A stretch of DNA of 64,000 nucleotides, taken from Oopsacas minuta. Taxonomy: Eukaryota; Animalia; Porifera. Location of the stretch: the NCBI GenBank assembly GCA_024704765.1, contig JAKMXF010000310.1:931999-995998 (forward strand). Reading direction: 5' to 3'. Below the pieces are notes generated by a model. The model saw only the letters and a list, made by a program, of their open reading frames with translations, was not told the origin of the DNA and searched no databases. The translations under genes were made by a program, and so were the position numbers. The stretch's first letter is position 1. Each line of letters opens with the position of its first letter. Shown one piece after another: positions 1 to 63,453 of the stretch.

Positions 1-2413
1 AGATATGCAAGCGTTAGACAACTCACAATTGTCACCAAAGTATCCAGGAAGACAGTTACATGAATAATAATCTGGACCATTCATACAAATTCCACCGTTG
101 AGACAAGCCACATTCTCACAGTTATCAATTCTGACGTCACAATTCTGTCCTGTATATCCGTGGTTACATTGACATTCATAGGACGAATCAGCTTCTATAC
201 ACTGTCCGTTTTTACAAGGAATAAATGTACACGGGTGAACAATTCTCTGGCAGAGAGGACCTTCAAATTCGGGGGGACACATACACACGAAGCTACCTTT
301 TGTATTAATACAGATACTCTCATCCTTGCAGGGTTGAACTAGACATTCGTCAATATCTTCCTCGCATAAACTCCCATTGAATCCATGCGAACAGTTACAG
401 TTGAAAGAACCATTCATGTTAACACAAGTGCCTCCATTAACACAGGGTAGGTAGTTGCATTCGTTAACATCTAACTCACACTCTGTGCCTGTGTATCCGG
501 GAGCACACATACAGATGTATCCATTGGTTGTCTCCGAGCAGGCACCACCATTGAAGCATGGGGAGCTAGTACAGTGTAATATTTCGGTCTCACAAGTGCT
601 ACCTGTAAATCTTCCTGGACATTCACAAGTATAGGAATTTATCATATCAATGCATGTACCTTTGTTCAGACAAGTTTGATCATTACAATCATTAATGTTT
701 ATCTGACACTGATCACCTGTGTATCCTTCCATGCAAGAACAAGTATATCCTTGCTCAGAGTCCACACAAGTTGCCCTGTTTTCACAGGGAAGCATTGTTA
801 TACATTCATTTTCAAATTGGCACCTGTCTCCAGTTAAACCAGTAGCACAAGTACATTCAAATCCACCTACAGGCAAATTTTTACATGATCCCCCTCCTAA
901 ACAGGGCACAGATGTACAATTCCTTTGGAAACATAAGTTCTCATCCATGATTATATTATCTGTACTCACATTCTCGAAAAGAGAGTTTGTGATTATATCT
1001 CCTCCAATATAACAAAGCTGATTATTACTAGTAATAACAATAGAGTTCGCAGTTTGCAAAGATGCCAATCCGTCTACACTTACAATTTGAGAATTTCCAA
1101 TTATCGATAAGCGACCACCTACAGAAGATAAGGAGCTGAAACCAGTTATCTGTAAAAGATCGGAATTAAGGTTAAGGTAAATAGAGTTGGTAACAGATTG
1201 GATGCGTGTAAATCCATTGATATCTTCAAGATTTAAGTTAGAGATTAGGTATAGTTCATCAATCATTACTATTTCGTTCAGTCCTGACAAATCAGATAAT
1301 TTGCTATTATATGCAATGACGACAGGTCCATTAACAATCTGTATGTGCTTGAAGCCGGATACATTTAAGAGTTCCAGGTTGCCAATGACAGAAATGCCTT
1401 CTATGGTTAACATTTCGTCAGAAGCTATATTTCTCCCTAATTCTGAAGTGCTGACCAAATCTGGCATTTGGATAATAGATATTGATCGGAAAAATTCTAA
1501 ATTCTCAAGACCTGCCAGCGACTTCAACTGCTGTATTTCTCTAAGCACTAAACTGCCGTTAATCACACGCAAGCCATTAAGAGGAGACAGAGAGGATTCT
1601 ATTTCACCACTAATCTCTAAGTCAGCCTGTAGCCTCTCGCAAAGAGACAGACGTAGAATAGAGTACATAGATGGGATCTTTACTATGTTTAGACCGTTTT
1701 TACAATTCGCGAAAAATGATATTTTCATTGAAGAAGTATTGCTAATTCCTTCCTCAGTATCTACAGCCTGTAGGGTAACCGTTCTCTCGGAGAGGTCAGG
1801 AGAGAACAAAAGTATGTTAGCTAGCTTAGAATTAGAGTAGAATACTCGAGTAAGCGCAGAGATGAATTGTTCAGTAGTGGCTGGTCCTTCTAAGGTCAGC
1901 GGCATGAGCTCAGGAGTTGATCTTATTACATCAGACTCTAGAGGATTAAATGTCAATTTTTCGTCGACTCCATCCGGACTATTGACTAGCATGATAATCA
2001 CCCGTTGTAGGCGACCGGAATCGTCGGAGAGAAGGGGAGGGAAGTCAGGAGAGAATATTGTGATGCTGGGGGTAGTACTCTCCTCGAGTACTGGAGTAAA
2101 TAGGGGGGAAATAAATAGAACCGGTTGTAGGTTTGTAAAACTGAGATTGATCGAAGATTGAGCAGAATTAGAATAAAAACGTCCATCAAATGCTCTTAGA
2201 GAAATTCGTGAGGTAAAGAGTGGGGAAACTGGACGTGTTGGATCGGTGAGCAGCTGGAGAGACTGTAAGATATGAGAGAATAGCTGATTGCTGAGTCGAA
2301 TTGAAGGTTGTGAGATGGTCAGAGTACGAAAGGTTGAGAAGTGAGCAATCGTAAATTCTGTTTTTATAGAAGCATTCGATATAGGGTCACATGTGAATTC
2401 ATTTCTTGAGTAC
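1..2413 (-). CDS. Exon 23 (continues past left edge): end of B repeat 23, B repeat 24, receptor L-domain, 8 complete EGF repeats and start of a ninth
   Basis: Manual minus-strand translation is stop-free: ..NCKNG..CERLQADLEISG..GGRLSIIGN..ITSNNQLCY then CTSVPCLGGGSC..., DVNECNYLPCVNGGTCVNMNGSFNCNC, etc. Acceptor tatgtag|G. Confidence 0.93.
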
Positions 2414-5400
2414 CTACATAGAAACAACAGAGTAAATCTATCTCCCAATAACGAACATATTTGTGGTTAGGCTGTTATCAGGTGTAGAGGTGTTGCTTTT
2501 CGGAGTGTCAGTTTTTGGAGACATAACTGTAGACCAAAGTTAATCCGAACTTCACTTGTTTGTACCCATGATAATCCGAACAGTCCGTTACTACCACTAA
2601 GACTATTATACCATGTATACTTCAGTCACTAATTTGACCCACTTATTAGATATTAACGAAATTAATCTCATTCGATAGAGGAGAGTTGAACGTTTTACGC
2701 AATGTGATTTTATGTAAAATTCTTTTTTATAGGATTTTTGGCCAATTTACCTATGTATACGAATTCATTAAAATAAAGCACCTAAAAGTTAGAATTCGAT
2801 TCTGAAAATGTATATACACATTCGTGCCATATGAACGTTTATGTAAATTAAATTTCATTAAAAAATATTAAAAACTCACGGAGTTTTGGCAATTCAAATT
2901 TTAGTTGATAGAGGGCATTAAGTTTATCCAGAAATACTGAAAATTATCACACGCATCGACTTCTAAAAATTGTTAATTTCTCATTTTTTGTGAATTACCA
3001 ATTCTAACTTGGAACTCAATTCTGGAAAATATTTATAAACAGATTCGTCTCAAAATTTACAGGTACCTTCCTTTGTATTCTATAAATCAATTCCCTTAAA
3101 AAAACAGGGGCACTAGTATTCTTTTACAGAGTTTATGTATATATTTTTGTGTTTTCTCAATTGTTAATTGCCTTTCTTAATACAATTATATTGTGATATG
3201 ACTAACTTGTAAGACTGTCACACATTTACGTATAGGAAGTCAGATTATCAAACTTCGATACAAAAATAAATCTGTTTTGGAAAATTATGAAGATGAGAAG
3301 TTTATAGACCACAAAAGTCTATAAAAAGTACAAACGACCCCCTGTTTCTTTTAAAAAGTTTTGTCTATTAATCGGCGCATACGAAACCGGTGATAACTGA
3401 CCCAATCTGATAGAAAAATGGAGTTGAATTCAAAAGAGGGCAAAACGATATGTGGAGACGATCATTTGGCCTGGATTCATTTAGCTCTACTTCCAGTGTA
3501 TGGGTATATGCCGAGAAATCTTCATCCATGATAAAACTGTCCGGAGCAATATTCACAGATTGAGAAGTAAATGCCTCATAGATAATATCAGTATTGAAGT
3601 CGGTACCAGGCTGGAGAGAAAATTATAAATCATACAAATTAAACTTCAATAAGCTTACGTGTTTGTTTGTGCTTGTAGATTAGAGTCTACAGGGTATGTG
3701 CAACCATGGCCTACAGGACTTAATACCTTGCAGTGGATGTCACCGAAGGCCAATTGAGTTTTTCAATTTATAGACAAACTAGCGCTCTTACCAATTGCCA
3801 AATATACTTTCTAGAAGTTTCCGTATATGAGGAATTCATTGAGACTAAGGAATTTCTCACAGCTTTATTCTCTTAAAATCATGAAAAAATCTAAATTATG
3901 AAATTGTTATTGTTGTCTGGTTGTTTGTTTGTTCGTTGTCAAGGAAAGGATTTATGGAATGCAATATTGAACTCGAATTTCGCTATTCGGAGATATCGTA
4001 CTACTATCTATTTATCGTGATTATTGAAGAAAGTAAAAACTTGACTAGTTATATGAATATCCAGGATCCGAGGTACGTAGCAATTTAGGAAAACACATGG
4101 CTAACCTCATTTCGATCAAGATCCAATATAGGAACATTATCATTGTCATCTATTACTATTACAGTAACCAAACACGAAACGTTAGATAGTATGCTCTGAA
4201 CTTCAATTACAACTGTCTGTTGAAATAGATCAGGCTCTGGATTAACGAGGTTGTAACTGAGAGTTGTCAATATCTTAGAATATTCTTCTGAACTTCCTTC
4301 TCCCTGTATGAGTATTGTATTTCTTGTTGAGACAATGTTGAAGCTGGAGTTGACACTCTCATTGAGTTGAATCTGGTCTGATAGAGAATAATTCGCGAAT
4401 CTTATAGAGGCGGATGTGATAATGTGATCAGCATCTCCATCGTAGAGTGTTAATAGAGAAGCAATTAGTATACCTACAATAAGCAAACGGATTAGAGTTA
4501 TATGAATTAGCTCACAAAGTAATAGTTGGATTAGTGAAATGCATTTAAACAATACTACAAAAACCCCACTTAATCATCCGATTCGGTCAACCAATTATCC
4601 AAAAAAAGTACTAGTCCCTCGTTGACTGAATCGGATAATTGAGTGGGAAATACTGTAGTTAATAAATAAGGAAATATGAGCACATAATCACAAATGTTAT
4701 ACAATGGTGAAAAGTTTCAAGACATATATATATAGACAGGGTAGTAGGAAGCACATGGAAAGTGGGGCAGGCCATGTTTACATAGTAATATAAAGGGGCG
4801 GTTATGCTAACTCATGGCACATATAACTAACATTATTTCATTAAAAAAGTGAGGCGGCCCAGGCCATCCCACTTCCGACACCCCTAAATATAGAGGTATA
4901 TCATATTCTGTAGTTAAATCGTATACAATTCGTTCTTTATCAACACACAGCTTAGTACATCGGATTTAGCTTGAGTGTTTAACAGCAAATTTTCTTAGTG
5001 TTTATGGTAGCTACGCAACTGGATAACCTCGGCCAGCACTACATGCCTCGCATTGACAAAAAGCAGAAAATCTATTAATTCATTATCTAAGACCCACCGA
5101 GAGTACCTCTAATGGCTTTCTGTAGTAATTACTAGAATATAAAAAAGACATTTTCTTCTGAGGAACCCAAATACTTCAATTCATCATAGCGATAAATGTG
5201 TTTTAGTCCAAATTCAGCATAAAAATTAATTATTCAGACATTTATCGTATATTTCCCCACTTGTAGAGGTAAATTTCAATGGTGTGAGGCATAATTATCT
5301 CTAAACTATGACCCATTCCCCACTCCCCGCAAATAGAGGTTCTCCGTTAATAGAGACCCAACTTAATGAGGTTGCACAGCTTAGATTTCCCAAAAAATTA

Positions 5401-8400
5401 TGTCGGCTCTATGCTTTGTTCGGATTAGCGAGGGGCTTTTCGGATAAGATTATTTGTTGTATATTTAACAAATAGGAAACAAAAGGTACAAAGTGAAATA
5501 AAGAGCAATAGTAATTGATTGAATACTATAACACAGGTATGTGTATAGGTAAAAGTGCATACCATTAGAATCAATGTTTTCATTGTAATAGAAGAATGAA
5601 AGGTTACAGGAAATGACGAGAGGGTTATCATTCACAAGAGAGATTACTATTATGAGCGAAGGAATGTTACTGTCGAAGCTCCCATCACTAACAACGAATG
5701 TGATTGTTCTGTTGGTTGGAGAAGGCTCGAACCTTTCGTTACGGTAAACAACAGAGGAAAGTATTGATTGGTAGTTAGTCAAATTAGAAGTACCAGAGAG
5801 AAATAAATCGACCTGGGAACCTATAATTGGAGAATAGATGCATTACATATAGAATCATTATGTATTAGAAGTACTTCTTTCAAAGAAAAATTTAGTTCTC
5901 ATTCATTATAATACAAGTCCTATTCGGTAAGACGTACTTCGGATAGTACGTACTAATTTTTAACTCCCGAAGGCGAATTCATTTTATCTGAGTTCTACTG
6001 TAATTCGTAACAAATGTAACGTAATATTAAGCACCCACTTGTATTCAGGATTTGAATGTCATTTCTAACCAGCTTATCATAATCAAGAGATAATGACTCG
6101 TATGGCATATCAGAATCTCCAGATAGAGAGATATTTGCTGATTGTAGGGGGAAGATAGCGTTGTTGTCATCATCTGATAAAGCGATACCTGACAGCGTTC
6201 CAACATTGAGTGTATTATTCCTAAAGATGGGATAATTATAATACAGATGAACCTGCATAAACGATATCTGTATAATCCGGAAGACCTCTATAATTTGACA
6301 GCGTTTCTGATCTGAAATAGCTTCCCACAATACAAATTCACATGTATAATCAGACATTTTTGCTAAACCGACAAAATGATCATGTCCCACGAGTGTCGGT
6401 TTATGCAGGTTCCAGAGAATAAATTTGAGGTAGTTATATATCTCATCAAACATATCAATTGTATTACTAGTTTAGAACTTTAGGTACATTAACTCCTGTA
6501 ACTAGATAATAGAGATCGCAACGGACGAGTTTTAGTCTAGAGCCCGCTGACACGAGGCATTCAGACCCGAAGCCCGGGGCCGACGCATACTTGAGTTAGA
6601 AAATAATATTGAATTAAAAATATATGAACTAGATCGACAGTCAGAAACTGTGATTGAATGCAAATTTCAATGATAATTCTAATTGAATATAAGAGAGAAA
6701 GGAAATTATTTAAAAATGTAATGGCCGGGATATTCGGAAACCTAAAGTATAGGCCTGAAGCTAGAAGCTCAAATTCGGCCCCAGCCCGAACGAGCCTCGG
6801 GCTCGGGCTTGGGCTGGGCTAACAACCTCGACTAGATAATACACACATACATGGCGTTTCTAGGGGGATGTTTTGCTTGCCTCCATTTGACCTCCCAGAA
6901 GATATACTATAGTGAAACTGCGTTAATACGAACACATATAATATGAATTTCCAATTAAGACGGACAGAATTTTACACAATTTTAGTCCTTGCAATAGATA
7001 TTCAATTGTTTTACTCCGGATAAAGAGTATAAATCTCGAAGGTCCCTTGGTGTACGTATTAACGAGGTTCTACTGTATTTCTTATAAATAGAAGTATAAT
7101 TCCCTAGTTGAACATATTTGTTAATAGGTATATCACGAAATATTTGGCCAGTGCTGTTAATTGTTTGTTGGTTGGCCAGACCAAATACAGTAGAACATCT
7201 ATAAGTGAGGAGGTCGGGACGGAGAATTTCCTGATATCCATCATTCACCATTTATAATTTCAAATGTAATAAATGGGGAATGGGATTACGTGTTTTTTCT
7301 CCAAATTTTGCACAAAATTTGATAATTCAAAAATATTAATCTTGGAATTCCAGGGTTGCTGTGGGAGTAGAATTTCAATCCCCATACCCATTCGATTCCC
7401 ACAGGATTTCTGTGGGAATGCCTATGGAGATCCCCACAGGAAAAATATGATTACTATACCCATTCCACATCAACGCCAATCCGGTGGAATTCCCCACCCA
7501 TATATGTAAATTCAATAGTGTGAGGTATAATTATGTACAATTATACCCCATTCCCCATTCCCCATTCTCTACTCCCTCCCCACTTATAGAAGTTGCATTG
7601 TATATCAGAAATATTCGGTCTGGCCAGACCTAAAGGTTAAGTAGACCAACATTTTCAGACGTTTTGGACCGGGCTAACTTTTAGGTACGGCCAGACCAAA
7701 ATCAACACGGATAAATTATTTCGTAACAGGTATCGTATCATCATTTCACTATGTAATACTTGTGTATATAAATCTGTAGTAGATTAGCAGCTGATGTCAG
7801 TAGAATTACATTTCGATATTTGCAGGATAATTTCGCCAATACTTTTTTCTGTATAATTAGTTAGAAAATAAATTGAAAAATGTTCGTGTATCCTGTTACA
7901 GCATTTATGGGTCAAATTATAAGCCCCACAGGACTTTGCTTCCGATAAGAAAGACAATTTCAGTCCCCTTGAAATCGTTATCGAGAATCAGTTTGGTTAA
8001 AAGCAAATACGAATTCAGGATGGAATTTAAATTTCGAAGATGGCATTAGTAATAACAACAGCTACTTCATATTTAGTGAATGGATAGGCAATTAACCATC
8101 CAAGTAAGCTAACTAACGAGTTACTGATATGTGTATAATGGAAGGTTGGATTATGTCTCTATCAAGTATTAATATTATCCATAAATATAGTTAATTGAGA
8201 ATATCATTGAAAGGAAGCTACTCACATGTGCCCTTCAGTAAAATGTAATACTCCATTAGTAAGCTGAATAAGAGGAGGATTGTTATTGATTACTGTAACA
8301 TTTATGAGGATAGTAGTAGTAGCCATCATTTCTTGACTCCCACTGTCCTCTAACGATATCGAGATCATCCGAAGGCCGGGAAGAGGTTCATCAGAAGTGG

Positions 8401-53400: not shown

Positions 53401-56400
53401 AGTGTTTATGAAAATGAAGATCATCTTTTGGTTACTTAAACCAACATTTAACAAGTAGAAGGTATTTGATAAAAAGGATGAGTTTAAGTTTTGAGAGTTT
53501 CTGAAAAAATCGATAAACATAAAAAAACTACCATATATGGGCATGAACTTTGATTGCATCATCGTTGTTAAAATCACTTGGAAAGCAGGTTCAAAAGTAT
53601 TCTAGATGTCTCCGCCGTATGTGGAAACCTATTTACAGTTGAATTTGTAATGATAGCTGTAATTCTTCATGATCAAACAGAATATAATCAATGGTCTGGA
53701 TATTATTTTGGCAATTCTTTGCTTGGCTAGCCGTGTATATAGTAGGCCATGGGTAGCCACTTATCCAAGGGTAAATTCCATTCCAAACAAAGCGTGGAGT
53801 GCCTCAAAATTACCAAGGACAACATCCAAGCCATAATCAGACTCTTTTCAATTGTCGAATGACGGTCTCAGATACGTAAATGAAATTATTCCTAGAGTCT
53901 TGTAAAGCTGGAATACCATGTTACAAAAGATGAAAATATTTCAATGTATTACCTTAGGAGCGTCATTGGTAAGTATTATTGTAATATCTATCAACATAGC
54001 ATCAGAGTCAGAATTCCCATCATTTACTGTGATTGTGATCATTCTTGATTCGGATGAAGGTTCTTCAGCAACATTCCAATATGTAAGAGTCTGAATAATT
54101 GACTCAAATTCCAAAATCGTTTGAGGTTTATTAGCCTAGAGGAGTATAAATTTAGTATAGTGGGGCTGAGACCAATATTCGCCCGTTTGGATGACTAAGC
54201 ATTTCACACCTTAAACGCAATATCTGATGAAAAAATTTAGGTAATTGAGAGTAAAAGATTTGATTAATTAGTTAGAATGGAATATATTCAATTTTCATGA
54301 GTTTCATAACTCTATTAACAATTTAAAGAATAAAATTAGAATAAAATATTAATAAATAACGTGGTACGTAGTAGTACATTGAAAAGACTAAACGAATATT
54401 CGAATAATTGGTATATCGTTTAAGCCCAAAAATCTTGTATCAGAAATAAATTGTAGTATAAATAGTACTCAGAGTAGAGATGTAATTAAATTGCTGTGAT
54501 AATCTAGAAATTGAGCTAATGACGAACGACCAGAAAATATGAAGTTAAAGAAATGTCAGAATGAAAATTTCTGATTTTCGGCTTTTCAGTTAACCGAATA
54601 CTGCCGAGAAAAAGTGTGATTGTATTACATCAAAAAGGTGGAAAAATCTCGCTTTCGGTAGTGGGAATTGGTTAAAACGAAGTTGTACAAATTTAGTTAC
54701 GAACTTAAAATTTCAGCCCTAATTGGTGAATGTTGAGATTTTCACCCAAGCTTTAGTAATAGGTATGACAATAAAGAAAGCGTTTAATAGACTTTCTGTA
54801 AGAGAATACTATACTAAGTAATAGGCAAACAATCACATAAATTACCAGATATATACTAATACTTACTAAGCCTACAGATTAAGTAAGTCCAAAGCAATGA
54901 AATAACAAAATGTCCAGCCGACCCCTGAGCTGCACTACCAGTATGATAGTGCAGCTCAGGTTATGTATTTTGTTCTTTTCAAGGGGGAACACCCCGCCTG
55001 ACCACCTCGTGTAGATGCAGCAATGCACTAGACCCCGACTGATTTAGGGCTCCTGGTTCTGATAAATATTTCAGGATATTCAAATAATTCGTCCCCTACT
55101 AAACTTCATGTTATATCCTCAAATCTTATTGATAAAATTCTAAATAATTATGCTGCGATTACCCCCGGTCTAACTTTTGAAACGAAACCTCTAGGATCAA
55201 ACTGAAATATTTGCAAAAAGGTGTGAAAATATGATAAATCACATGATAAATCTGTGAAATTGTAACTTTCAGACTCTGAAACCCTCAAAATCGGACTCTA
55301 CGCACCCAATTACCCCTGACAACATTTTCAAATATAATCTCTAGCTTGCTGTATATTTACATAGAAATATATGAAAATATGATTAATCAACAAAACGGTG
55401 TGAAATATTCACTTCAGAAAACTTCATACCCGAGGTGCAATCTCCGACACATATGTACATGTGAATCGGACTGCTATATCGCGAACGGACGGACGTAAGG
55501 ACGTCGCACATGCCATTAGAGCATCTCTCTCTATAGAGGCTGGACTAAAAATCTTCAAATAAACTCACAGAAACAAAAATAAATGTAGAATTGACTTGCG
55601 TTAAATTTATAAGATTAATGTTAGGAGGGTTAAGTTGTATTCTGTCAAATTGAGATTGTGGGGCTACGATCTTAATCTGTGCAGATGTAATATGTGTACT
55701 GTCTACATCATTGATCCTAACATCAGAATATTGAAAGATTGACAGACGGGTATGAATATCAGATTCTGTATAATTTAACAGCAAAATTGAAGGAAATAAT
55801 ACTGGGGGATCATTGACAGCAAATACTTCAATATTCAATATACTAGAATTGAAGGAAAAACTACTAGTGTAAATGTTTTTAGATGGAATACCATACGACT
55901 GATCCCAGAGGAGAAATTCAACTGTTGTAGTACCAAACTGATGTAGATAAGGAGAAAACCTGTAAGAATAGATCAAAAGATTAATTAGATGAATACTACT
56001 ACGGTTGAAGAATTTAATAAACTAAATATTCAGTTAATTAGGTACATACACACAAGGTATTCAAGAATCAAATAACTTATATACAGTGGAGTCTCCCAAA
56101 ACGGACACTCCGAGAAGCGGACAATTCTCTACAACGGACAGAAGCCATGTCACCAACGTGTCCGTTATTCGGAGACCCCACTGCATATAGCTCAGCTATT
56201 CTATAGTACAGTTTGTGTGTATTAGCTTTCTATCTTCGAGGAAAGGTAATGTTTTATTATTAATGAATGTCACCTTTTCGAATGAGGGTGGGGTTTTTGT
56301 ATTGCAAAAAAAACTGTAATAAATTATAGTTCAGCTATATATAAGGAATCCCTTCAAGAATATATTAGGAAATTACGTCATAATAATACTTTGCACTGAT

Positions 56401-59400
56401 TAAATCCTCTTAGAGGAGTGTTCCCAATTTCATTCGATATTTCATTATAAAGTAATGTACTAATTAATACCACTAAACATCTCCAACGTCAACTAAAAGT
56501 CTTTGAAACATCAAAATACACAAATAAGCAAGTACAGTTGACAAAGGTTAATCCAAACTGCCACGAGAAATAAATGTGGATCGAATGAACGAATATCAAA
56601 CTTATTGAAAGTTACAAATATTTTACAGCTTCAAAATTGAAGACAAAAACTAGGAATTAATTATAGATTATACAGGATATTATGAGAAATGGAATTTACG
56701 CTTGAATTGCTTGAAATACGTTGTTCTGTTAAATTTGGTGATATATTTTATATTTCGAGGGACTCTCAGCCTATATAGATATATATCCTTAAGGGTGGTC
56801 GGCTGTAAGTACGTGCGTATGAGTATACAAAATTTCGTTAGTTCTAACCATATCTGCAAACTAAATTCGAGTCTAAAATCACATTTTCGCAAATGGATAG
56901 AAATTTCGAATGCAATCCACAGCGAATGGATGTATCAATATTTCACAATGTAGCAAATACCACATACCTACGAATAACTTTAAAATAATATTAGTTCATC
57001 TGCTCGGAACAGGGCTAAAATAGAAAGGAAATATGCTACAACAGCCAAATGCTCCAACTACACACTAGATATATTAAATTCAAATGCGATTGTTACTAAC
57101 AAACCTAATTCTGCTGGAAGAATTAATAAGCTGAGGATTTTCATTCGATATATTCACATCAAATATTGGCGACCAAACATAAGGTTGAAGATTAGACGTA
57201 GTCTGCCATTCACCCAATAGAGTATCTAATGCAATTATTGCAATGCCTAACTCTTCGTCATCAAGATCAATAGATATATTAGCCAACAAATCGTTGATCG
57301 AATAACCAAGATTATTCGACATAGAAACATCCTCCGAAATTTCCCTAAAAATTGGCAAAGAATTGGTAAAAATCGGAGCTCTGTTCAAATAAAGTACTGA
57401 TATTGTGGTAGAATTGGTTTCATCACTAAAACTGGAATTATCCAAGAGATTTCCATCTTCATCGAGTGATTCACAAAAATTAGCACTGTTGCCATTGTCC
57501 CAAGCTCTAAAGAGAAGGAAATATGAACAAAACAGGATAGTTCATAAAGTACTATAATGAAAAGGGCAACAAAAAGGCAAACATATAGTATATATAAGGA
57601 TTAAAACTCTCAATGAAAAACAAAAGCATATAAACTTGATATGGATTTATTGATGTGTTCTAATTCTCAGCCTTGAGTTCCACATTGTTTAAGTGAGAGT
57701 TTGAATAGCGGACAATTCTTGTTCGCATGGGGCGCCCTCCAGGCGCCTATGGTTTAGAAATGTAATTATGATCGGCACTTCATGCATAAAATAATTTAAC
57801 AAAGTATGAAATGACAAACTCCAAAATGTAAAATTCTGATTCAAAGACACTGAATTAGTCCCCAACAATATTTTGAAATTTGTATAATTAAATTTGCATA
57901 TGTTGAATTCAAATACGTATGTTAAAAATCATATTCAGTTAAATAAATTAGGATGTGTCATAACATTCGATACACTAAAGGCAATGGCCTTGTATTCAAA
58001 TTTTGGACCATGGATGGCAATTACACTGGGACTATTCTGACCAATATCTCGATTAGTTTACTATATATAATGATATTATTAGTAAATGAGATATATTCAT
58101 CTACCTCCCATAATTACATAGAAGATATTTTGGAATAATTAAAGCAAACTGATTAACTTAATTTTCGAGTTAATAAAGGGTACTAGGCGCATGCGGGCAT
58201 GGAACTAGGGGGCACAAATGCGAAATAGTGAGAAAAATTCCAAATCCAAAAATTTGAACCAATATAGTTAACTTATCCGAAAAAATACCCAGATCATAAA
58301 CGAGATATTGCTTCCAAAGACCCAAACCAACAAGGCAACAACCAAGAGCTGATAAGATACCCTGGCAACACGGCCAACACCCAGGAGCAATATTGACATC
58401 AATCCAAATGCAAAAATCTTCACTATAGTAAAATAGACCAGTGTGAAGTTAGCGCAGGATTCGACTGAGCATACTTGTAATGTAAATTTGATGCCCTTCC
58501 CATGATTTGATTTGGTTAGAAACCACAGAACAAATGGAAGACATATGGACGTTTATGAATATCTAAAATATACTCTACTTTCAATATTGTTTTAACATTG
58601 GACGTTAGTTGTGACAAAATTTTGTAAAATAATGTTGACATTCTTGTGAGATATAGTTTTTGAAAGTTTGACTAATTTTGAGTTTCTAATTCTGATACAA
58701 TACTATCTTTCATATATAATTATGTTATAATCTACTTAGACCTAGCATGATTCTGTAAATGTTGATTAATATGATTATATTCAGTTTAGAATCCAGAATT
58801 ATTACCTCAGACCTACACTATTTATCCGCGATCAATTCTCCTAATATTCAAAACCCTAGAAATAATCTTTTAACGAAAATCACTACTATTTCATAAAAAC
58901 ATGTAATAACTAAAAAGGTTCCGGGACCGCAGAGGTTGGTCTAGTAAATCGCGTGCGAAGATCATTTAGATGGTTGATATATGCATGAATAGGCTCAACA
59001 TGCCTAACGGCGTCGAGTAAGGGGTCAATCGATAGGTTTAAGAAAAATTTGAGAATGGAATGTTGTTACATTCCTAATGAATTTTGCGTTGCTAGGAAAA
59101 TATCCTTCCAAATATGGTCAATATGGTATATATTAAATTGGTGGAAATTTCATGCTGAGCACGAATATGGCCATAAAACCTGAAAGCAACTGAATTAGCA
59201 CAACACCGGCGATTCCTATTGGACACCAAGTTTGAGACGTCTTTCTATCGGTTAATATAGCTTGTAGATGACAAAAACGCATTTGTTGGAATATGTTAGT
59301 GGTTAGTCCTTGTTTTTTAGCATATTTTGACTAACTACATAATCAATATGAGTGCTAATCATCAGAATTCTCCGCCTACAATGATTGGAAATTGATTCCT

Positions 59401-62400
59401 TCAACATAAGGAATAGGACATAGATCTTCTAATGCAAATACATCAAGATAAGCAAGTGAATATTCCATAATTTCTTAGATTCTGTCGAATAAACGTCACT
59501 AGGAAAAAATTATTGAAAACAATATTTACGATCTTTCAAAAGAATATCACTCTACACATTACTACTCATATCAATTCCACATCTATTTTTCATTGTATTT
59601 ACTCAATTTTCTCTCTACTTTCGCTTTATTTGATTCCACATCTACATATTCAACATGGCCTGCCTAGTACCTGGATGTAAGTATAACTATCGCGATTAAG
59701 ATAAATATAATCAATTTATACCTGTCTTCTCTTTTCTTATGATATCAACTGAGAGAAGACTATATGATGAACAAACGATTGAGGGTATGTTGTCATAATA
59801 CTCTTTTATCACACTACTCCATTGAAGTGGTTTCCAACATGGGGTCCATGGACCTCTATGGGATACGGACGAGAGCAGGGCGTCCATATGATCTCAAAAT
59901 ATTATTGCATTTACGGGAGGGGTTCCACAGGGTGTGTTAAAAGTGGTAAGGTAGTCCACAGGTTGAAAGTTGAGACCGCTGCAATACTCAACGTGACCTA
60001 GTAGGTCACGAACTCCATTTATTTTTATTTGAAGATACAAACGGCAGTAAAATACAACTCCCGTTATAACTAAGTTAGATAACATGAAACTATGGTCTAA
60101 CTCTTAACGTAGAGATTCATCACTCACCTTAGCTCGAAAGTAATTGATTTTAATCCGTATATATCGAAATGATACCGGGATCCCATTCCCGAGCACTACA
60201 TGATAACGATAGTTACTAATTGTTATACGAACTTTAATAAATTTCTAACGTTAAACAAGTAGTCCATGAATTCCTTTTTCCCGAGTTCGACGAATGGCAA
60301 TGGTGAATGATTGCAACGAATTATATATGACATAAAGGTTCTACACCTAAATTTCTTGAGCGACTTTTCTACAATTCTATTTACAACTGTTTGGTCAAAT
60401 TTGATATATAATATATTGAAATGACCAGGTAGTTCACAGCAATAACCTGTTGGGCTTCAGGTTTAAGACTATGTACTAATTTTAGTTTTGCTTTAAATTT
60501 CATGCGACATATAAGGTCTATTATCTTGATGGAAATAACTCACACAGCTCAAACTCTACATTTCTCTACTTAATAAGGCTTTGAATATATTCACTGTTAA
60601 CTGGGTGGTAAAACATTCGGCCACAGGCCGTTACATCGAGCTCAAGGGAGTGGGATAATTACTTAAATATATCCGAAGTTAGTTATAACCGGTAAGTTAT
60701 ACAGCTTTCGACAAGAGTGTCAGATCCGGACAAGAATAGAGGTTGATTATCGCCAAATATTGGTTTTTGGGAAGATGAAGAAGAGATATTTTTCCATGTA
60801 AGCAATCAGAATGCGAGGACAGCGTAAAATGGGACTAAAATCGTTGTCATCTGAATTAATTATCCCCTGGAGATCAACTGGGGTATCAGGTTGTTGAGAA
60901 TTGATCTCTTGAAGGGCTTGGCCCAGATCCAAGCCTGACCAGGGGTTGTAGATAAACTTCAAGAAGTGGAGGGGGGCTCACACCGCACGGGAGATACATT
61001 TTGAAATAATGAAAAATAGTGATCAGGCCTTATATTTGTCTATGCCCATAGATACTTTTATACAAAGTGTCAAAAATTATCATCCAAAGTTGGTTCGTTG
61101 TTAATTTAAGTTACTGTAGAGATCATGGATGACGAATTTTTATGAATATTCAATTTATACTATTAATCTGACTTCCCATATACTTGAAATTGATTTTGAC
61201 ATCATATCTAGCACCAATGTGACGATGCCCATATATGGCCATTTCCAAGATTTTGCAATACTCTTCAATTATTTCATATCAAAATGTATTACAATGGTAT
61301 GGGTAGTCGGGTATATATTATATATTGGCTAATATGATTTTACCATAACTTTAACGATTCTGGAGGTATTATTGAATATTCATAAAAAATTGTCATTCAT
61401 GGTCTCTACCATAAATCAACAATGAGCCAATATTTGAATGACAAATTTTGAACCTTTTGTATAATAGTATCTATAGATTATTTCATTTATTCAATTTGAG
61501 TTGGCAAATACGATATTTAGCGTTCTACGAGGCATCGAAGAATGACATATTTAGCTAAATAAATGCTTATTAGATACATATTTTACGCATTCCTGAAATT
61601 TTTTGTTGTAAAATTTGATGTTCTAAAAAATGTTATACATTTATTCAGGCAAAAAATGCACCTTTCTTTCTACACTAAAGAAACAATGTATAAAATGCGC
61701 TCAGCTAATACTGCAGCCTTGCTATTTTACTGTTAGGACATAAATTTAGTAGGTTATGACTGAACTTATAATACGTGTTATAATATACATATCATACGTA
61801 ATACTTCTTCATTGAAAGAAAATATTAAACAACTTAGATATTTACAATCATGAATTGATGATGAAGCAAAAATTCGAAAAGGGGCAATGATTGTAACTTC
61901 ATGATGTTACATATGGCGGAGTAATTATAATTCAATTTCAAGCAGTCTACAAAAGTACAGCCAATCTAGAGTTTAGCCCTGGAGTAAATTGTACAACGAC
62001 CCTTTTTCACAGGTTACTTCTTGCTATCTGTACTAGCAAAAATGTCCATGAAAATCAATCATCAACCATTTGGTTATTAGCCTCTTTAAAGTACCACTAT
62101 GGACACATTTGGAAAACATTAAATTTGAAGTGACATCTTCAGTTTAAACCGATCGTTTGAGTGGTCATACTAATATGTTTGGGGATATTTTTCAGTAGCA
62201 ACACAGGAATGTGGCAACATTGTATTCTCAATTTTGTCCCAGCCTCATCGAAAAGTGCTCCGTTGTTCGACACCGCTAGGCTAACTGAGTCTAGTTTACA
62301 CATATCGGCCTTCTAAAGTCTAAATGGCCTTGTAACACGATTTTGCTAATTCGTCCACCGCGGCCCCCTAATGTTCTTGTCATTTTTCAAATATTTCGTA

Positions 62401-63453
62401 CAAATACATGATGTCATCGTGTGTTCTTGCGAGAAACAATCAATAATCTATAACTGGGAAGTTTGCGGATTTTAACAGAGACAGTTTGTCATAATGCACA
62501 GAGTTCCCAATGTATATAATTTCATAATCCTCCACTCGAACGAGAAAATTTCTGTAATTATCCATGACGTATAGTTACTAGACTATCAAAATTAAACAAT
62601 ATATTATCAGTAAACACATATAACTTGGACAAATATCGTTATATACATCTTACGATATATATATTATGCATATATAATGGTTGTTATCACAAAACATACG
62701 ATGATATGATTGACATAATGTATTTGTAAGAAATATGTGAAAAATTCAAGAAAATTAGGATTCCGCGGTGGACGATCCAGTAAACGCGTGTTAAAAAGCC
62801 ATTAGAGGCCCAATATGTGTAAAACTAGACTCAGCTAGCTTAGGGGCGTAGAACAAGGGGTCCCTCGATGGAGTTGGGAGAAAATTTGAGAATGGAATGT
62901 AACCACTTTCCGGAGTTGCTAGGAAAATATCCCCAAACATATTAAAGCGAACACTCAAAAGACGTGAATTTTTCGCAGATCACGATTATCGACATCATGA
63001 ATGTGTTATAAGAATTTTATTTCTTCAAAATGTGTCTAAAAGTGGAACTTAAAAGTGGCAAACACAAATTTGTTGATGATGGATTTTCATGGACTGTTAT
63101 AGTATTAGAACACATATCAAGGAATGATCTGTGAAAAAATGGTCGCTATATTATTTACTTCAGAATTAAGCCCAAATTTTGCTAGATTGAATGGACCACA
63201 ACATATCAAGCGAAATTGCTTACCGAAACATTACAGTTGCATTCCCGTCAATTTTTGAATAATTAGGTAGAGGTTTAAACCTCAATCTAGAATCAGGAAA
63301 CATGAAGAGAGGATTACATCTAGAAGCAGCTGTAACAGTCCAAGTAAAATTTATCAAAACTTCCCAAATTCCAGGAACAGTCGCTGATAAACTATGAACA
63401 GCCAATCCTTTTATATCATCAGAAAGAGGGCTTGTGGAGTCAATATCGAAAAC
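1..63453 (-). CDS. Giant non-classical cadherin-superfamily protein (FAT/Dachsous-like size; cadherin + calsyntenin-like + LamG + receptor-L + EGF), partial at both ends; 23 exons, ~7,247 aa in window
   Basis: Exons (transcript order): 63224-63453, 57105-57506, 55569-55959, 53953-54135, 25450-37948, 23653-23950, 23003-23208, 22277-22671, 21092-21482, 17022-17402, 15842-16107, 14370-15449, 13799-14270, 13580-13731, 12014-12317, 8835-9137, 8501-8652, 8226-8431, 6039-6220, 5563-5820, 4106-4473, 3402-3610, 1-2413. All introns are GT..AG, phases chain, and the sum 21,741 is divisible by 3. Repeat motifs (xEN, DxD, LDRE/LDFE, DxNDNxP) continue across junctions. Confidence 0.93.
3402..3610 (-). CDS. 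Exon 22 (B repeat: PGTDFNTDIIYE..FYQIG)
   Basis: ctccag|CCT acceptor, GG|gtcagt donor; phase 0 to 2 joins exons 21 and 23. Confidence 0.88.
4106..4473 (-). CDS. Exon 21 (B repeat)
   Basis: ttgtag|GT acceptor, GAG|gttagc donor; ..EEYSKILTTLSYNLVNPEP..DDNDNVPILDLD. Confidence 0.9.
4737..4886. mobile_element. hAT-type MITE
   Basis: Imperfect TIR CAGGGTAGTAGGAAG / revcomp TAGGGGTGTCGGAAG; 8-bp TSD tatataga/aatataga. Confidence 0.6.
5563..5820 (-). CDS. Exon 20 (B repeat)
   Basis: ttatag|GT acceptor, G|gtatgc donor; ..YQSILSSVVYRNERFEPSPTNRTITFVVSDG. Confidence 0.9.
6039..6220 (-). CDS. Exon 19 (B repeat)
   Basis: ctttag|G acceptor, A|gtgggt donor; NNTLNVGTLSGIALSDDD. Confidence 0.85.
6510..6831. 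mobile_element. hAT-type MITE with GCCCG-rich subterminal repeats
   Basis: Perfect 8-bp TSD ctagataa on both sides; degenerate TAGAG-type TIR. Confidence 0.65.
8226..8431 (-). CDS. Exon 18 (B repeat; not in ORF track)
   Basis: ttttag|GAT acceptor, AT|gtgagt donor; DILKSLKYIYSTSDEPLPGLRMISISLEDSG..INNNPP. Confidence 0.9.
8501..8652 (-). CDS. Exon 17 (B repeat)
   Basis: tttcag|AT acceptor, GAG|gtaata donor; SYVSSIRISLIDYQEPSQEVLML. Confidence 0.88.
8835..9137 (-). CDS. Exon 16 (B repeats)
   Basis: atttag|CT acceptor, G|gtttgt donor; LLSTLTYTNSAPEP..VNDG..LNDN. Confidence 0.9.
11279..11536. mobile_element. hAT-type MITE
   Basis: Perfect 13-bp TIR CAGTGGCGTCGTG; TSD gcacctat/gcgcctat. Confidence 0.8.
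12014..12317 (-). CDS. Exon 15 (B repeats)
   Basis: aactag|GTT acceptor, T|gtaagt donor; GTNDNSPIIII..FEYEEE..QDSD. Confidence 0.9.
12540..13030 (+). pseudogene. Degenerate mariner-like (Tc1/mariner) transposase C-terminal fragment
   Basis: IIGPFFFE..TVT..ERY..YFQHEGGTPHT, then frameshifted FLWG.LKDRVY-like sequence. Confidence 0.7.
13104..13469. mobile_element. Tc1/pogo-type MITE with internal TAACTCGAACATTCG repeats
   Basis: TIR CAGTCAACACCCAGTAACTCGAAC vs CAGTCACCATCCGGTAACTCGAAC; TA at right flank. Confidence 0.65.
13580..13731 (-). CDS. Exon 14 (B repeat)
   Basis: ttttag|AC acceptor, ATG|gtatgt donor; YTTVLARLKYFNRIEEP..DRSL. Confidence 0.9.
13799..14270 (-). CDS. Exon 13 (B repeats)
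   Basis: ctgtag|GTT acceptor, G|gtacgt donor; YQSILNTLRYINTQPEP..LNDNCP. Confidence 0.92.
14370..15449 (-). CDS. Exon 12 (cadherin repeats EC24-26 and start of a Cys-loop B repeat)
   Basis: tattag|GTA acceptor, GAG|gtttgt donor; LDFE/LDYE/FDFE and NDNAP motifs. Confidence 0.95.
15842..16107 (-). CDS. Exon 11 (cadherin EC23)
   Basis: ctacag|GG acceptor, GAG|gtaact donor; LDRED..ASDLGSP..DVNDNFP. Confidence 0.93.
16170..16240 (+). mobile_element. hAT (Charlie-like) terminus, one-ended
   Basis: CAGTGCTTCTCAAACTTTT terminal motif. Confidence 0.45.
17022..17402 (-). CDS. Exon 10 (cadherin EC22-23)
   Basis: tgttag|GT acceptor, G|gtgaga donor; LDENDNQP..VSENVPIG..ATDADS. Confidence 0.93.
17880..17990. 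repeat. Dispersed repeat family (inverted copy ~24605-24720, further copy ~41585-41645)
   Basis: Shared CCAGCCAGGCCC..CCCTGTAT..AAAAATCAGC core. Confidence 0.6.
19111..19305. repeat. Long hairpin: ~85-bp arms, 55-bp perfect core, 25-bp spacer containing AACCTAACC
   Basis: 19132-19186 is the exact reverse complement of 19230-19284. Confidence 0.9.
19510..19935 (+). pseudogene. Decayed IS630/Tc1-like transposase N-terminal (HTH) fragment
   Basis: Frameshifted RKRLIAAHEAGISYQKMSELYGVKKDTAYRI..DVTLSE..ASISTIADIL. Confidence 0.5.
19964..20660 (-). mobile_element. hAT transposase fragment (DUF4371 / ZMYM1-THAP12-like), frameshifted, with a hAT terminus at 19964
   Basis: LRGHRE..NKGNFLEIL..AQYTHHSIQDQLL..YFAIMCDEMEDVGKEEQLSICLRYVD; CAGTGGCGGCGCTAG end. 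Confidence 0.8.
21092..21482 (-). CDS. Exon 9 (B repeat)
   Basis: ttgtag|GTA acceptor, G|gtaagt donor; LKEIKYENTQNEPTPGTRIL..LNDNPP. Confidence 0.92.
21891..22048. mobile_element. Tc1/pogo-type MITE
   Basis: TA-CAGTAGACTC..GAGTCTAC termini. Confidence 0.5.
22277..22671 (-). CDS. Exon 8 (B repeat)
   Basis: tcctag|AT acceptor, ATG|gtatat donor; ..PPVLDLNGP..NFNATFYEN. Confidence 0.92.
23003..23208 (-). CDS. Exon 7 (B repeat)
   Basis: ttttag|A acceptor, G|gtacct donor; YSNDAEQP..GRTIAFYVYDD..INDIP. Confidence 0.9.
23653..23950 (-). CDS. Exon 6 (B repeat)
   Basis: atttag|AA acceptor, AG|gtttga donor; NGNPISVASTNLSISDAD..SGTASIDIYQGLLRSI. Confidence 0.9.
24020..24590. mobile_element. Non-autonomous TIR element (~50-bp imperfect TIRs, possibly Transib-like)
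   Basis: ..GGGGACGCTGC..TCGAGTTCTGACTTTGT mirrored by ACAAAGTCAGAACTCGA..GCAGGCGCCCCGTG. Confidence 0.5.
25040..25082 (+). mobile_element. Helitron-like 3' terminus (GTCGC-GCA-GCGAC hairpin, then CTAG|T); sister copies at 23425-23468 and 41457-41490
   Basis: Conserved hairpin + AAGCGAAG + CTAG/GTAG followed by T in three introns; matching A|TC 5' ends at 16442 and 38015. Confidence 0.6.
25450..37948 (-). CDS. Exon 5, 12,499 bp: 21 cadherin repeats, 12 complete B repeats (one with inserted LamG) and start of the next
   Basis: 4175-aa ORF; ttctag|GTT acceptor, G|gtaagt donor; repeats counted by motif. Confidence 0.97.
39370..39760 (-). pseudogene. MULE (Mutator-like) transposase fragment
   Basis: PDFKPNVAVSDFESAPRNAFQ motif, with stops and frameshifts. 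Confidence 0.65.
41760..42560 (-). mobile_element. Decayed LINE (L2/CR1-type) reverse transcriptase fragment
   Basis: LLELSLTFDTVDHEILL..GVPQGSVLSPLLFNLY..FYADDTQLY..RNLGVNFD..DYCNA. Confidence 0.9.
42653..43035. mobile_element. hAT-type MITE
   Basis: TIR CAGGGGC..GCCCCTG; perfect 8-bp TSD ttacaagg. Confidence 0.8.
43404..44747 (+). mobile_element. Full-length but inactivated Tc1/mariner element, DD37E spacing
   Basis: TA TSD; ~27-bp imperfect TIR CAGGGTGTC..TGGCCTAT; transposase from ATG 43621 with a frameshift near 43810; WSDES, MQDGAPAH, NSPDLNPIQNIW (37 residues between D and the E position, now Q). Confidence 0.93.
44857..45737. mobile_element. Non-autonomous hAT element with TGGGTCA subterminal repeats
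   Basis: 19-bp TIR CAGAG(C/G)TGCAAATGGGTCA; TSD agaccgat/agaccgtt. Confidence 0.85.
45138..45608. mobile_element. hAT MITE nested inside 44857-45737
   Basis: CAGTGGCGTAG..CTACGCCTATG termini; TSD agttctag/aattctag. Confidence 0.7.
46217..46342. other. Assembly gap (126 N)
   Basis: Run of N. Confidence 1.
46491..46786 (-). mobile_element. Probable 3' LTR (TGTTG..CAACA, 286 bp) with adjacent polypurine tract
   Basis: Minus strand: AGGTGGGGAG directly precedes TGTTG at 46776; the segment ends CAACA at 46491. Confidence 0.5.
48084..48460 (+). pseudogene. TRAF-like RING / zinc-finger pseudogene nested in intron 4
   Basis: MSETV..GGYNPSLL..CTECEGILRDPQ..YICKEC..KCPFKEDGCEWEG..HSENC..IPCPY; frameshift from a 7-bp duplication; in-frame TAA at 48343. 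Confidence 0.65.
48550..49507 (+). mobile_element. Internally deleted hAT element retaining a dimerisation-domain remnant
   Basis: CACATAGCTA TIR at both ends; VERMFSSVKRIKTRLRSQM..LALLSIE-like motif; no clear TSD. Confidence 0.7.
50116..50697. other. Assembly gap (582 N)
   Basis: Run of N. Confidence 1.
50698..52250 (+). mobile_element. Gypsy-type integrase of probable Ginger/GIN-like transposon, frameshifted, with GPY/F module and downstream NTC motif
   Basis: H-x4-H..C-x2-C zinc motif; GMDLTGP, ISDNGTEF, QTNGLVE catalytic core; GGKLEDKWNGPY; no RT seen, but the 5' side is an N-gap. Confidence 0.85.
52921..53762. mobile_element. Foldback / Mutator-like non-autonomous element with ~220-bp TIRs
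   Basis: 52921-53139 is a high-identity inverted copy of 53544-53762. Confidence 0.85.
53953..54135 (-). CDS. Exon 4 (B repeat second half; not in ORF track)
   Basis: ctctag|GCT acceptor, AAG|gtaata donor; FESIIQTLTYWNVAEEPSSESRMITITVNDG..TNDAPK joins VQVNGG of exon 5. Confidence 0.92.
55569..55959 (-). CDS. Exon 3 (end of second FRAWD-type repeat, start of first B repeat)
   Basis: ttacag|G acceptor, TCT|gtgagt donor; EFLLWDQSYG..AVNDPPVL..NYTES..INDVDS. Confidence 0.9.
56084..56183. mobile_element. 100-bp pogo/Tigger-type MITE
   Basis: TIR CAGTGG(A/G)GTCTCC..AACGGACAC; TA at left flank; internal CGGACA repeats. Confidence 0.7.
57105..57506 (-). CDS. Exon 2 (FRAWD-type repeats)
   Basis: ctttag|A acceptor, AG|gtttgt donor; AWDNG..LNRAP..ISED..GIAIIALD..GEWQ..SRIR. 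Confidence 0.9.
61081..61439. mobile_element. Non-autonomous TIR element (~70-bp imperfect TIRs)
   Basis: GTAGAGATCATGGATGACGAATTTTTATGAATATTCAAT mirrored at ~61372-61410. Confidence 0.65.
62030..63095. mobile_element. Older foldback element with ~390-bp diverged inverted arms; related partial copy at ~58920-59200
   Basis: Collinear inverted matches (GTCCACCGCGG, CTGAGTCTAGTTT, AATATGTTTGGGGATATTTT, GTCCATGAAAATC). Confidence 0.75.
63224..63453 (-). CDS. Exon 1 of those in the window (FRAWD-type repeat)
   Basis: tttcag|GTT acceptor, CG|gtaagc donor; KGLAVHSL..GIWE..SRLRFKP..ATVMFR joins AWDNG of the next exon in phase 2. Confidence 0.88.

What the first reader, a model, noticed from the sequence alone, without database searches (positions are those of the whole stretch)
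1..63453. A >7,200-aa mosaic adhesion protein whose domain order matches no cadherin family I know
Seen: 23 phase-compatible exons give one reading frame, open at both edges: FRAWD-type x>=2 - B4 - EC12 - B5(LamG) - EC7 - B3 - EC2 - B4 - EC5 - B8 - receptor L-domain - EGF>=8. Known: FAT, Dachsous, CELSR and classical cadherins have one EC block followed by EGF/LamG modules near the membrane. None that I recall alternates EC blocks with a second repeat type or carries a receptor L-domain. Inference: a very long surface or matrix protein that automated annotation would probably label 'FAT4-like' and fragment; it may define an undescribed early-animal cadherin class.
Basis: partly seen in the sequence, partly recalled or inferred. 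Interest (0 to 1): 0.9.

Follow-up and report, generated by a model that had tools for sequence, protein, structure and literature searches.

The report
Giant secreted sponge cadherin-repeat protein
The window holds most of one real, intact sponge gene for a protein of more than 7,300 residues that strings ordinary cadherin beads together with two bacterial-looking bead types. Its relatives end without a membrane anchor, so it is probably a giant matrix filament of a conserved, unnamed sponge family, not a FAT-type receptor.

Summary
On the minus strand, 23 exons joined by 22 GT-AG introns give one stop-free frame of 7,312 codons, open at both window edges. The domain order is FRAWD x2, B4, EC12, B5 (LamG inside the first B), EC7, B3, EC2, B4, EC5, B8, receptor L-domain, EGF x8.

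Both assembly gaps lie inside the 16-kb intron 4, which carries transposon remains. No contig bridges them. A 64%-identical relative has all 23 exons in the same order with identical phases, and its intron 4 is only 307 nt. More distant relatives hold FRAWD, B and EC in one uninterrupted ORF. This is therefore one gene.

B and FRAWD are beta-sandwich domains whose nearest relatives are bacterial "cadherin-like" repeats (Cadherin_4/5, Big_9). B also resembles the calsyntenin juxtamembrane domain.

In three relatives the protein continues as LamG-EGF-LamG-like modules and ends at a conserved stop, with no transmembrane segment or tail. It is probably secreted.

Amphimedon has an uncharacterised 7,231-aa protein with a signal peptide and nearly the same order. 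The family is real and conserved in sponges, and I found no paper describing it. It was not shown outside sponges.

Other notes of this scan on this same window had already flagged the B, FRAWD, LamG and L-domain parts.

The parts
63224..63453 (-). exon 1 (aa 1-77); starts at an acceptor site, so the gene continues upstream of the window
   Evidence: 62% identical to the relative's exon
57105..57506 (-). exon 2 (aa 77-211)
55569..55959 (-). exon 3 (aa 211-341)
53953..54135 (-). exon 4 (aa 342-402); completes the first B repeat
37949..53952 (-). intron 4, 16,004 nt; holds both N gaps, a Tc1/IS630-type transposase ORF (43456-44597 +) and a reverse-transcriptase fragment (41964-42236 -)
   Evidence: the same intron is 307 nt in the relative
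25450..37948 (-). exon 5, 12,499 nt (aa 403-4569)
23653..23950 (-). exon 6
23003..23247 (-). exon 7 (acceptor uncertain by a few codons)
22277..22746 (-). exon 8 (weak acceptor)
21092..21482 (-). exon 9
17022..17402 (-). exon 10
15842..16107 (-). exon 11
14370..15449 (-). exon 12
13799..14270 (-). exon 13
13580..13731 (-). exon 14
12014..12317 (-). exon 15
8835..9137 (-). exon 16
8501..8652 (-). exon 17 (found only through conservation with the relative)
8226..8431 (-). exon 18
6039..6220 (-). exon 19 (found only through conservation with the relative)
5563..5820 (-). exon 20
4106..4554 (-). exon 21 (acceptor uncertain)
3402..3610 (-). exon 22
1..2413 (-). exon 23, open at the window edge (aa 6508-7312)
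55785..63453 (-). two FRAWD-type domains (aa 1-269, exons 1-3)
   Evidence: AF2 model of the Amphimedon pair has pLDDT 85.5; best PDB matches are cadherin EC1-EC2 pairs; bacterial Cadherin_4/5/Big_9
36785..55784 (-). B block 1, 4 repeats (aa 270-790)
32852..36691 (-). EC block 1, 12 cadherin repeats (aa 822-2101)
30104..32851 (-). B block 2, 5 repeats; the first has a LamG domain (32027-32503) inserted in a loop
27857..30007 (-). EC block 2, 7 repeats
26591..27775 (-). B block 3, 3 repeats
25916..26491 (-). EC block 3, 2 repeats
21195..25888 (-). B block 4, 4 repeats (exons 5-9)
14595..17391 (-). EC block 4, 5 repeats (exons 10-12)
1756..14567 (-). B block 5, 8 repeats (exons 12-23); the seventh is diverged
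922..1716 (-). extended receptor L-domain (about 265 aa of leucine-rich turns)
   Evidence: Pfam Recep_L_domain 28.2 bits against a cut-off of 21.8; ErbB4 L2 domain E 0.0016; bacterial Recep_L_domain clusters
1..921 (-). 8 EGF domains and the start of a ninth
46217..46342 (.). assembly gap 1, inside intron 4
50116..50697 (.). assembly gap 2, inside intron 4

Best explanation
The window holds 23 exons (7,312 codons) of a single intact gene of a sponge. It encodes a giant extracellular protein built almost wholly of beta-sandwich beads of three kinds: 26 canonical cadherin EC repeats in four blocks, 24 'B' repeats in five blocks, and at least 2 'FRAWD' repeats. These are followed by a receptor-L-type leucine-rich domain and an EGF array.

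Shown here:
- the gene model and the domain order;
- conservation of that order in a 64%-identical relative, and of a near-identical order in Amphimedon;
- the folds of B and FRAWD.

Shown only in relatives:
- a signal peptide (Amphimedon, read by eye);
- a C-terminal LamG-EGF-LamG-like end with a conserved stop, and no transmembrane segment, tail or hydrophobic GPI signal.

Inferred:
- The protein is secreted and works as a long (roughly 250 nm) filament of the extracellular matrix, stiffened by calcium.
- The EC blocks, 17 of whose 26 linkers keep DxNDxxP, give rigid Ca2+-dependent binding rods.
- The B blocks act as spacers or secondary binding rods. They have invariant E and DxD residues and NDxP-type linkers.
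- The C-terminal L-domain/EGF/LamG cluster docks the filament to cell-surface or matrix partners, as the LamG/EGF ends of EYS, agrin or laminin do.

It belongs to a conserved, multi-paralog sponge family that has no name.
For: - One gene. The spliced frame has no stop. Split B and EC repeats become whole only after splicing. All 22 intron phases are identical in an independently modelled relative, with 63.9% identity over 7,244 aa. Intron 4 is 307 nt there. In P0047, P0059, P0076, P0078, P0083, P0084, P0087, P0090 and P0107, FRAWD x2 and the following B/EC blocks lie in one ORF.
- Domains.
- B fold. The AF2 model has pLDDT 94.6. It matches bacterial RapA2/Cadherin_4-type models at TM 0.7-0.84, calsyntenin residues about 660-800 at TM about 0.55, and B4GALNT1 at Z 8.2. 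Cyanobacterial giant proteins carry 20-51 B-like stretches.
- FRAWD.
- Secreted. The same stop after ...HFNTCS occurs in L006, L007 and L008, and conservation ends there. LamG/EGF precede it. The next gene in L008 is unrelated.
- Family. The block order is conserved, with only small differences in repeat counts, in the 10 listed family members that keep it. That includes Amphimedon P0052, which has an N-terminal signal-like peptide. Three further members are rearranged paralogs.
Against: - No transcript evidence: no RNA-seq run was listed.
- The gaps in intron 4 are not bridged by any contig.
- Neither end of this gene is in the window. The N-terminus was not found within 10 kb upstream in the relative.
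- The missing membrane anchor is read from relatives, not from this genome. An alternative terminal exon cannot be excluded.
- Calcium binding, rod shape and partners are inferences from motifs.
- B does not resemble solved EC domains closely: hhalign gives a probability of 0.9%, and no cadherin appears in the VIA top 50.
Confidence: 0.7

Rival explanations
1. It is a membrane-anchored adhesion receptor, either a FAT-like or a type-III classical cadherin, whose transmembrane and cytoplasmic exons I missed.
For: The EGF-LamG-EGF-LamG order near the C-terminus is what non-vertebrate classical cadherins and FAT carry next to the membrane (PMC5968619). The exons after the EGF array are small and diverged.
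Against: Three relatives share a stop codon at the same position, after which conservation ends. No conserved exon follows within 4-9 kb. In L008 an unrelated GFO_IDH_MocA gene follows. The last residues are not hydrophobic.
Confidence: 0.12
2. It is a link between the microvilli of the choanocyte collar or another cell-surface coat. In that case it is a secreted or shed cadherin that ties cell projections together, not a bulk matrix fibre.
For: Pena et al. 2016 (PMC4942974) report uncharacterised Ephydatia cadherins, one drawn with a LamG3 domain, that are enriched in choanocytes.
Against: Orthology between those transcripts and this gene was not tested, because no sequences were at hand. This is a lead only.
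Confidence: 0.12
3. The window holds two or more genes, or a scaffold misjoin at the gaps: a FRAWD/B gene upstream and a cadherin gene downstream.
For: It holds two unbridged gaps, and 760 bp of it drew no contig.
Against: Exon 4 ends and exon 5 begins exactly at B-repeat borders, in phase 0. The relative has the same two exons 307 nt apart. About ten further relatives have no intron there at all.
Confidence: 0.04
4. It is a decaying or unexpressed gene copy.
For: Transposon remains lie in introns 4 and 9. There is no expression evidence.
Against: There are 7,312 codons without a stop. All splice sites are canonical, and all 22 intron positions and phases match the relative.
Confidence: 0.02

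Closest known systems
Amphimedon queenslandica 'Cadherin domain-containing protein' (UniRef A0A1X7..., P0052, 7,231 aa)
   Same: 31% identity over 96% of exon 5. The order is similar: FRAWD x2, B, EC11, B-LamG-B, B4, EC7, B3, and so on. It has an N-terminal signal-like peptide.
   Different: It has nine more B repeats before FRAWD. The model is cut short inside the last B block. It shows a single EC5 block where the window has EC2-B4-EC5. It is uncharacterised.
FAT / FAT-like protocadherins
   Same: Very large size, many EC repeats, and EGF and LamG modules after them. Database names such as 'Fat 4' are attached to weaker hits.
   Different: FAT has one unbroken run of 32-34 EC repeats, a transmembrane segment and a signalling tail. 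This protein has 26 EC repeats in four blocks separated by 24 B repeats, plus FRAWD and L domains. Its relatives have no membrane anchor.
Calsyntenins
   Same: EC repeats, then a LamG/LNS domain, then a beta-sandwich that the B model matches (TM about 0.55, probability 1.0). Of 77 B repeats, 11 give weak CLSTN_C hits. A region of paralog P0144 scores 29.2 bits against a cut-off of 27.
   Different: Calsyntenin has 2 EC repeats, one such domain, a transmembrane segment and a kinesin-binding tail. None of the 38 B-LamG-B modules hits CLSTN_C at E <= 0.01.
Bacterial giant adhesins with Cadherin_4 (RapA2-type), Cadherin_5 and Big_9 repeats
   Same: These are the nearest relatives of both B and FRAWD by sequence profile and by fold. 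The L-domain is also nearest to bacterial Recep_L_domain proteins.
   Different: The sponge gene has 22 spliceosomal introns, canonical animal EC repeats, and EGF and LamG modules.
EYS / Crumbs / agrin-type EGF-LamG ends
   Same: The best named hits of the EGF exon are Crumbs and eyes shut. In relatives the protein ends in LamG-EGF-LamG-like modules. EYS and agrin are secreted.
   Different: Those proteins carry no cadherin, B, FRAWD or L domains.

Membership tests
Cadherin superfamily | Tandem EC repeats with Ca2+-binding linker motifs | tested here: met
   Pfam Cadherin 6e-250; 26 EC repeats by my own HMM; DxNDxxP at 17 linkers
FAT / FAT-like | One uninterrupted run of about 32-34 EC repeats | tested here: not met
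   EC repeats lie in blocks of 12, 7, 2 and 5, separated by B blocks
FAT / FAT-like | Transmembrane segment and cytoplasmic tail | tested here: not met
   Tested in three relatives only: a conserved stop after the last LamG-like module. This gene's own end lies outside the window.
Classical (type III) cadherin | Cytoplasmic p120- and beta-catenin-binding domains | tested here: not met
   Relatives have no tail. Sponge classical cadherins are described with a transmembrane segment, JMD and CBD (PMC5968619).
Calsyntenin | EC x2, LNS, juxtamembrane beta-sandwich, transmembrane segment, kinesin-binding tail | tested here: inconclusive
   An EC, LamG, B-type-domain order is present, with a fold match and weak CLSTN_C hits. 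There is no transmembrane segment or tail in relatives. The modules do not hit CLSTN_C.
Lefftyrin / hedgling / coherin (sponge and choanoflagellate cadherin families, recalled from Nichols 2012, which is not held) | FN3 plus tyrosine phosphatase; N-terminal hedgehog domain plus VWA; cohesin domain | tested here: not met
   None of these Pfam families appears in the window exons, in the precomputed list for Amphimedon P0052, or in the relatives' C-terminal exons. This gene's own N-terminus was not seen.
Bacterial cadherin-like domain (Pfam Cadherin_4, RapA2 type), for the B repeat | Match to the family model at its threshold | tested here: inconclusive
   Only 2 of 77 B repeats hit Cadherin_4, best E 0.0011. 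Fold matches to models of that family are strong: TM 0.7-0.84, E 1e-6.
Receptor L domain (PF01030) | Score at or above Pfam's gathering threshold | tested here: met
   28.2 bits against 21.8 in the window and 23.4 in the relative. ErbB4 L2 domain E 0.0016.

The most novel reading that the evidence does not exclude
The family may be a surviving full-length form of an old metazoan matrix protein in which three bacterial-type modules (B, FRAWD and the L-domain) were joined to animal EC, EGF and LamG modules. These modules were either captured from bacteria or inherited from a pre-animal ancestor. On this reading, the EC, LamG, B-type segment is the source from which the calsyntenin ectodomain was later cut out.
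Probability: 0.15. Interest if true: 0.8.

Novelty: new variant of a known kind. Interest (0 to 1): 0.55.

Why it matters
Cadherins are central to accounts of how animals became multicellular. The catalogued families are all membrane receptors with a single EC run.

This family differs in three ways:
- EC blocks alternate regularly with bacterial-type beta-sandwich repeats.
- In relatives it lacks any membrane anchor.
- It is kept with nearly the same block order in a relative 64% identical to the window and in a demosponge 31% identical.

That points to a role for cadherin repeats in the matrix, not only at junctions. It also gives a candidate relative for the calsyntenin juxtamembrane domain, whose origin is unknown.

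In practical terms, gene finders with a 5-kb intron limit will cut this gene in two, so it is likely to be missing or broken in sponge adhesion-gene inventories.

Tried and rejected
- RNA evidence. Two run searches listed no RNA-seq run. The four runs found are assembled contigs that also cover the introns.
- Gap bridging. Laying those contigs on 45600-51300 bridged neither gap and showed repeat-level depths.
- Solved structures by sequence. Profiles of B and of FRAWD, and the LamG module, found no true relative. The kinesin hits are chance.
- B against EC. The profile-profile comparison gave a probability of 0.9%, so I do not call B a diverged EC repeat.
- N-terminus. The 10 kb upstream of FRAWD1 in the relative holds hAT-like transposon ORFs and no B, EC or signal-peptide exon.
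- Classical cadherin or FAT reading. Rejected on the conserved terminal stop.
- P0107 and P0144 as guides to the C-terminus. They proved to be paralogs with extra LamG modules.
- Literature. Nichols et al. 2012 is not held. Searches of the held library found no description of this architecture.
- Species. The name Oopsacas minuta comes from another agent's note. I did not verify it. The G+C content (35-36%) and the gaps of uneven length fit it.

Full report
**What is there**

The window is AT-rich (about 35% G+C) and has two N runs, at 46217-46342 and 50116-50697. The coding strand is the minus strand. A single open frame of 4,177 codons runs from 37948 to 25418, and a second runs off the window at coordinate 1.

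Pfam finds these families in the two pieces:
- Cadherin, E 6e-250, 19 stretches;
- Laminin_G_3, 1.5e-9;
- EGF, 2e-42, 8 stretches;
- Recep_L_domain, 28.2 bits against a cut-off of 21.8.

**Repeat map**

I built HMMs from the window itself.
- The EC model finds 12, 7 and 2 repeats in the large exon and 5 more in exons at 17391-14595.
- The stretches between them have no Pfam match at E <= 1, apart from LamG and a weak CLSTN_C hit.
- Those stretches consist of a second repeat of 125-135 residues, called 'B'.
- B has an invariant DxD, a conserved E, a conserved Y..N..EP...R...DG tail and NDxP-type linkers.
- The B model gives 28 partial or complete hits from 55799 down to 1756.

**Gene model**

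Conserved minus-strand segments were found by comparison with a relative. I then picked GT-AG pairs that keep the frame. The acceptor of intron 22 was corrected after comparison.

The result is 23 exons, 22 introns and 21,936 coding bases, giving 7,312 residues with no stop. Every B or EC repeat cut by an intron becomes a full-length match after splicing.

The order is FRAWD x2, B4, EC12, B-LamG-B plus B4, EC7, B3, EC2, B4, EC5, B8, L-domain, EGF x8 and the start of a ninth EGF.

Exon 1 starts at an acceptor site (63453) and the last exon is open, so both ends of the gene lie outside the window. Junctions 6/7, 7/8 and 20/21 are uncertain by a few codons.

**The gaps and the 16-kb intron**

Both gaps lie inside intron 4 (53952-37949). 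This intron also holds a Tc1/IS630-type transposase ORF and a reverse-transcriptase fragment.

No RNA-seq run was listed. The four runs that hold the sequence are assembled contigs. Laid on 45600-51300 they show repeat-level depths, bridge neither gap, and leave 46364-47127 uncovered. Reads therefore neither confirm nor contradict continuity.

Comparison with relatives settles the question.
- An ENA contig 65% identical in the large exon was walked with six look-ups (L001, L003-L006).
- It carries all 23 exons in the same order.
- Its splice model, built independently, has the same phase at all 22 junctions and aligns to the window's protein at 63.9% identity over 7,244 positions.
- Its intron 4 is 307 nt.
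- Exon 4 ends and exon 5 begins exactly at B-repeat borders, so no exon is hidden in the gaps.
- In about ten more distant relatives (about 32% identity) the FRAWD pair and the following B and EC blocks lie in one uninterrupted ORF.

The two sides of the intron therefore belong to one gene.

**What the unknown repeats are**

*B repeat.* An alignment of 77 copies gave an AlphaFold model with mean pLDDT 94.6.
- No solved structure is a sequence relative.
- The best solved fold match is a domain of B4GALNT1 (Z 8.2). Below it come generic Ig-like and cohesin-like sandwiches.
- Among predicted structures the nearest are bacterial proteins named RapA2 or 'bacterial cadherin-like' (Cadherin_4, Cadherin_3, Big_9), with TM 0.7-0.84, rmsd 1.6-2.4 and E down to 1e-6.
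- Among reviewed proteins the matches are calsyntenins 1-3 from worm, fly, fish and mammals, at residues about 660-800, with TM about 0.55 and probability 1.0.
- Of 77 B repeats, 11 give weak CLSTN_C hits, 3 give Cadherin_3 and 2 give Cadherin_4.
- A profile search of 1.84 billion representatives found proteins with 20-51 B-like stretches. The named ones are cyanobacterial, from Oculatella and Nostoc.
- A profile-profile test of B against EC gave no support for direct homology.

*FRAWD repeat.* The Amphimedon pair was modelled at pLDDT 85.5.
- Its best solved matches are classical cadherin EC1-EC2 pairs (E 3e-5).
- Its nearest predicted models are bacterial Cadherin_4/5/Big_9 domains, often from Planctomycetota.
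- A sequence search among long proteins found only family members and bacterial giant proteins, for example an Aquabacterium MAG protein at E 2.6e-140.

*L-domain.* It matches ErbB4 and ErbB3 L2 weakly (E 0.0016). It is nearest to bacterial Recep_L_domain proteins.

*LamG.* It sits inside the first B of the second B block. This B-LamG-B unit is conserved as a whole in every family member. All 38 copies hit Laminin_G_3 and none hits CLSTN_C.

**The ends, from relatives**

Amphimedon P0052 starts with a signal-like peptide followed by nine B repeats before the FRAWD pair. The signal peptide was read by eye.

Downstream of the EGF exon, three relatives (L006, L007, L008) share exons for LamG, EGF and two further LamG-like pieces. 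All three end at a stop codon at the same position, after ...HFNTCS, and similarity ceases there. There is no hydrophobic segment, no tail and no GPI-type end. In L008 an unrelated oxidoreductase gene follows.

I could not read that region.

**Interpretation**

This is a secreted giant protein of at least 52 beads and, by inference, a matrix filament. The EC blocks keep Ca2+-linker motifs. The role of B as a calcium-stiffened spacer, and of the C-terminal cluster as an anchor, is inference.

It is not FAT, classical cadherin, calsyntenin, lefftyrin, hedgling or coherin on the features I could test.

The family has several paralogous forms. P0038, for example, repeats [B-LamG-B, B4, EC2] five times.

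Pena et al. 2016 describe choanocyte-enriched, uncharacterised Ephydatia cadherins, one with a LamG3 domain. I did not test orthology.

**Novelty**

I found no description of this architecture in the held literature. The key paper, Nichols 2012, is not held. The Amphimedon protein is in UniRef without a function.

I rate it a new variant within the cadherin superfamily. It is of moderate interest for three reasons:
- the regular alternation with bacterial-type repeats;
- the likely lack of a membrane anchor;
- the possible link to calsyntenin.

The species name Oopsacas minuta comes from another agent's note and is unverified. The G+C content fits.

Noticed in passing
window 43456-44597 (+) and 41964-42236 (-): A Tc1/IS630-type transposase (HTH plus DDE_3, in two adjoining frames) and a reverse-transcriptase fragment lie inside intron 4. 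They probably explain why this intron is 16 kb here and 307 nt in the relative.
   Followed up: partly
window 20055-20537 (-): A DUF4371 (hAT-transposase-associated) fragment lies in the 3.7-kb intron 9. The same intron is 91 nt in the relative.
   Followed up: partly
window 46364-47127: About 760 bp next to the first gap drew no contig from any of the four runs, while the neighbouring sequence has repeat-level depth. It could be a gap-filling artefact or a filtered repeat.
   Followed up: no
window 2414-3401: Intron 22 is 988 nt here but 63 nt and stop-free in the relative, where the gene caller read straight through it. That is why the relative's ORF has 923 residues.
   Followed up: yes
P0038 (ENA, 6,725 aa): This paralog repeats a super-unit [B-LamG-B, B4, EC2] five times, which suggests the family grows by duplicating whole blocks.
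   Followed up: no
window 922-1716 (-): The receptor L-domain, like B and FRAWD, has its nearest relatives in bacteria (Myxococcota, and Bacteroidota T9SS proteins). Three unrelated modules of one animal protein therefore look bacterial.
   Followed up: partly
L003 5264-7050 (relative, upstream of FRAWD1): hAT-like transposase ORFs fill the 10 kb upstream of exon 1 in the relative, so the intron before exon 1 is also long there.
   Followed up: no
window 50001-51581 (+): The 526-aa ORF in the mechanical ORF list is an artefact of translating the run of N.
   Followed up: yes
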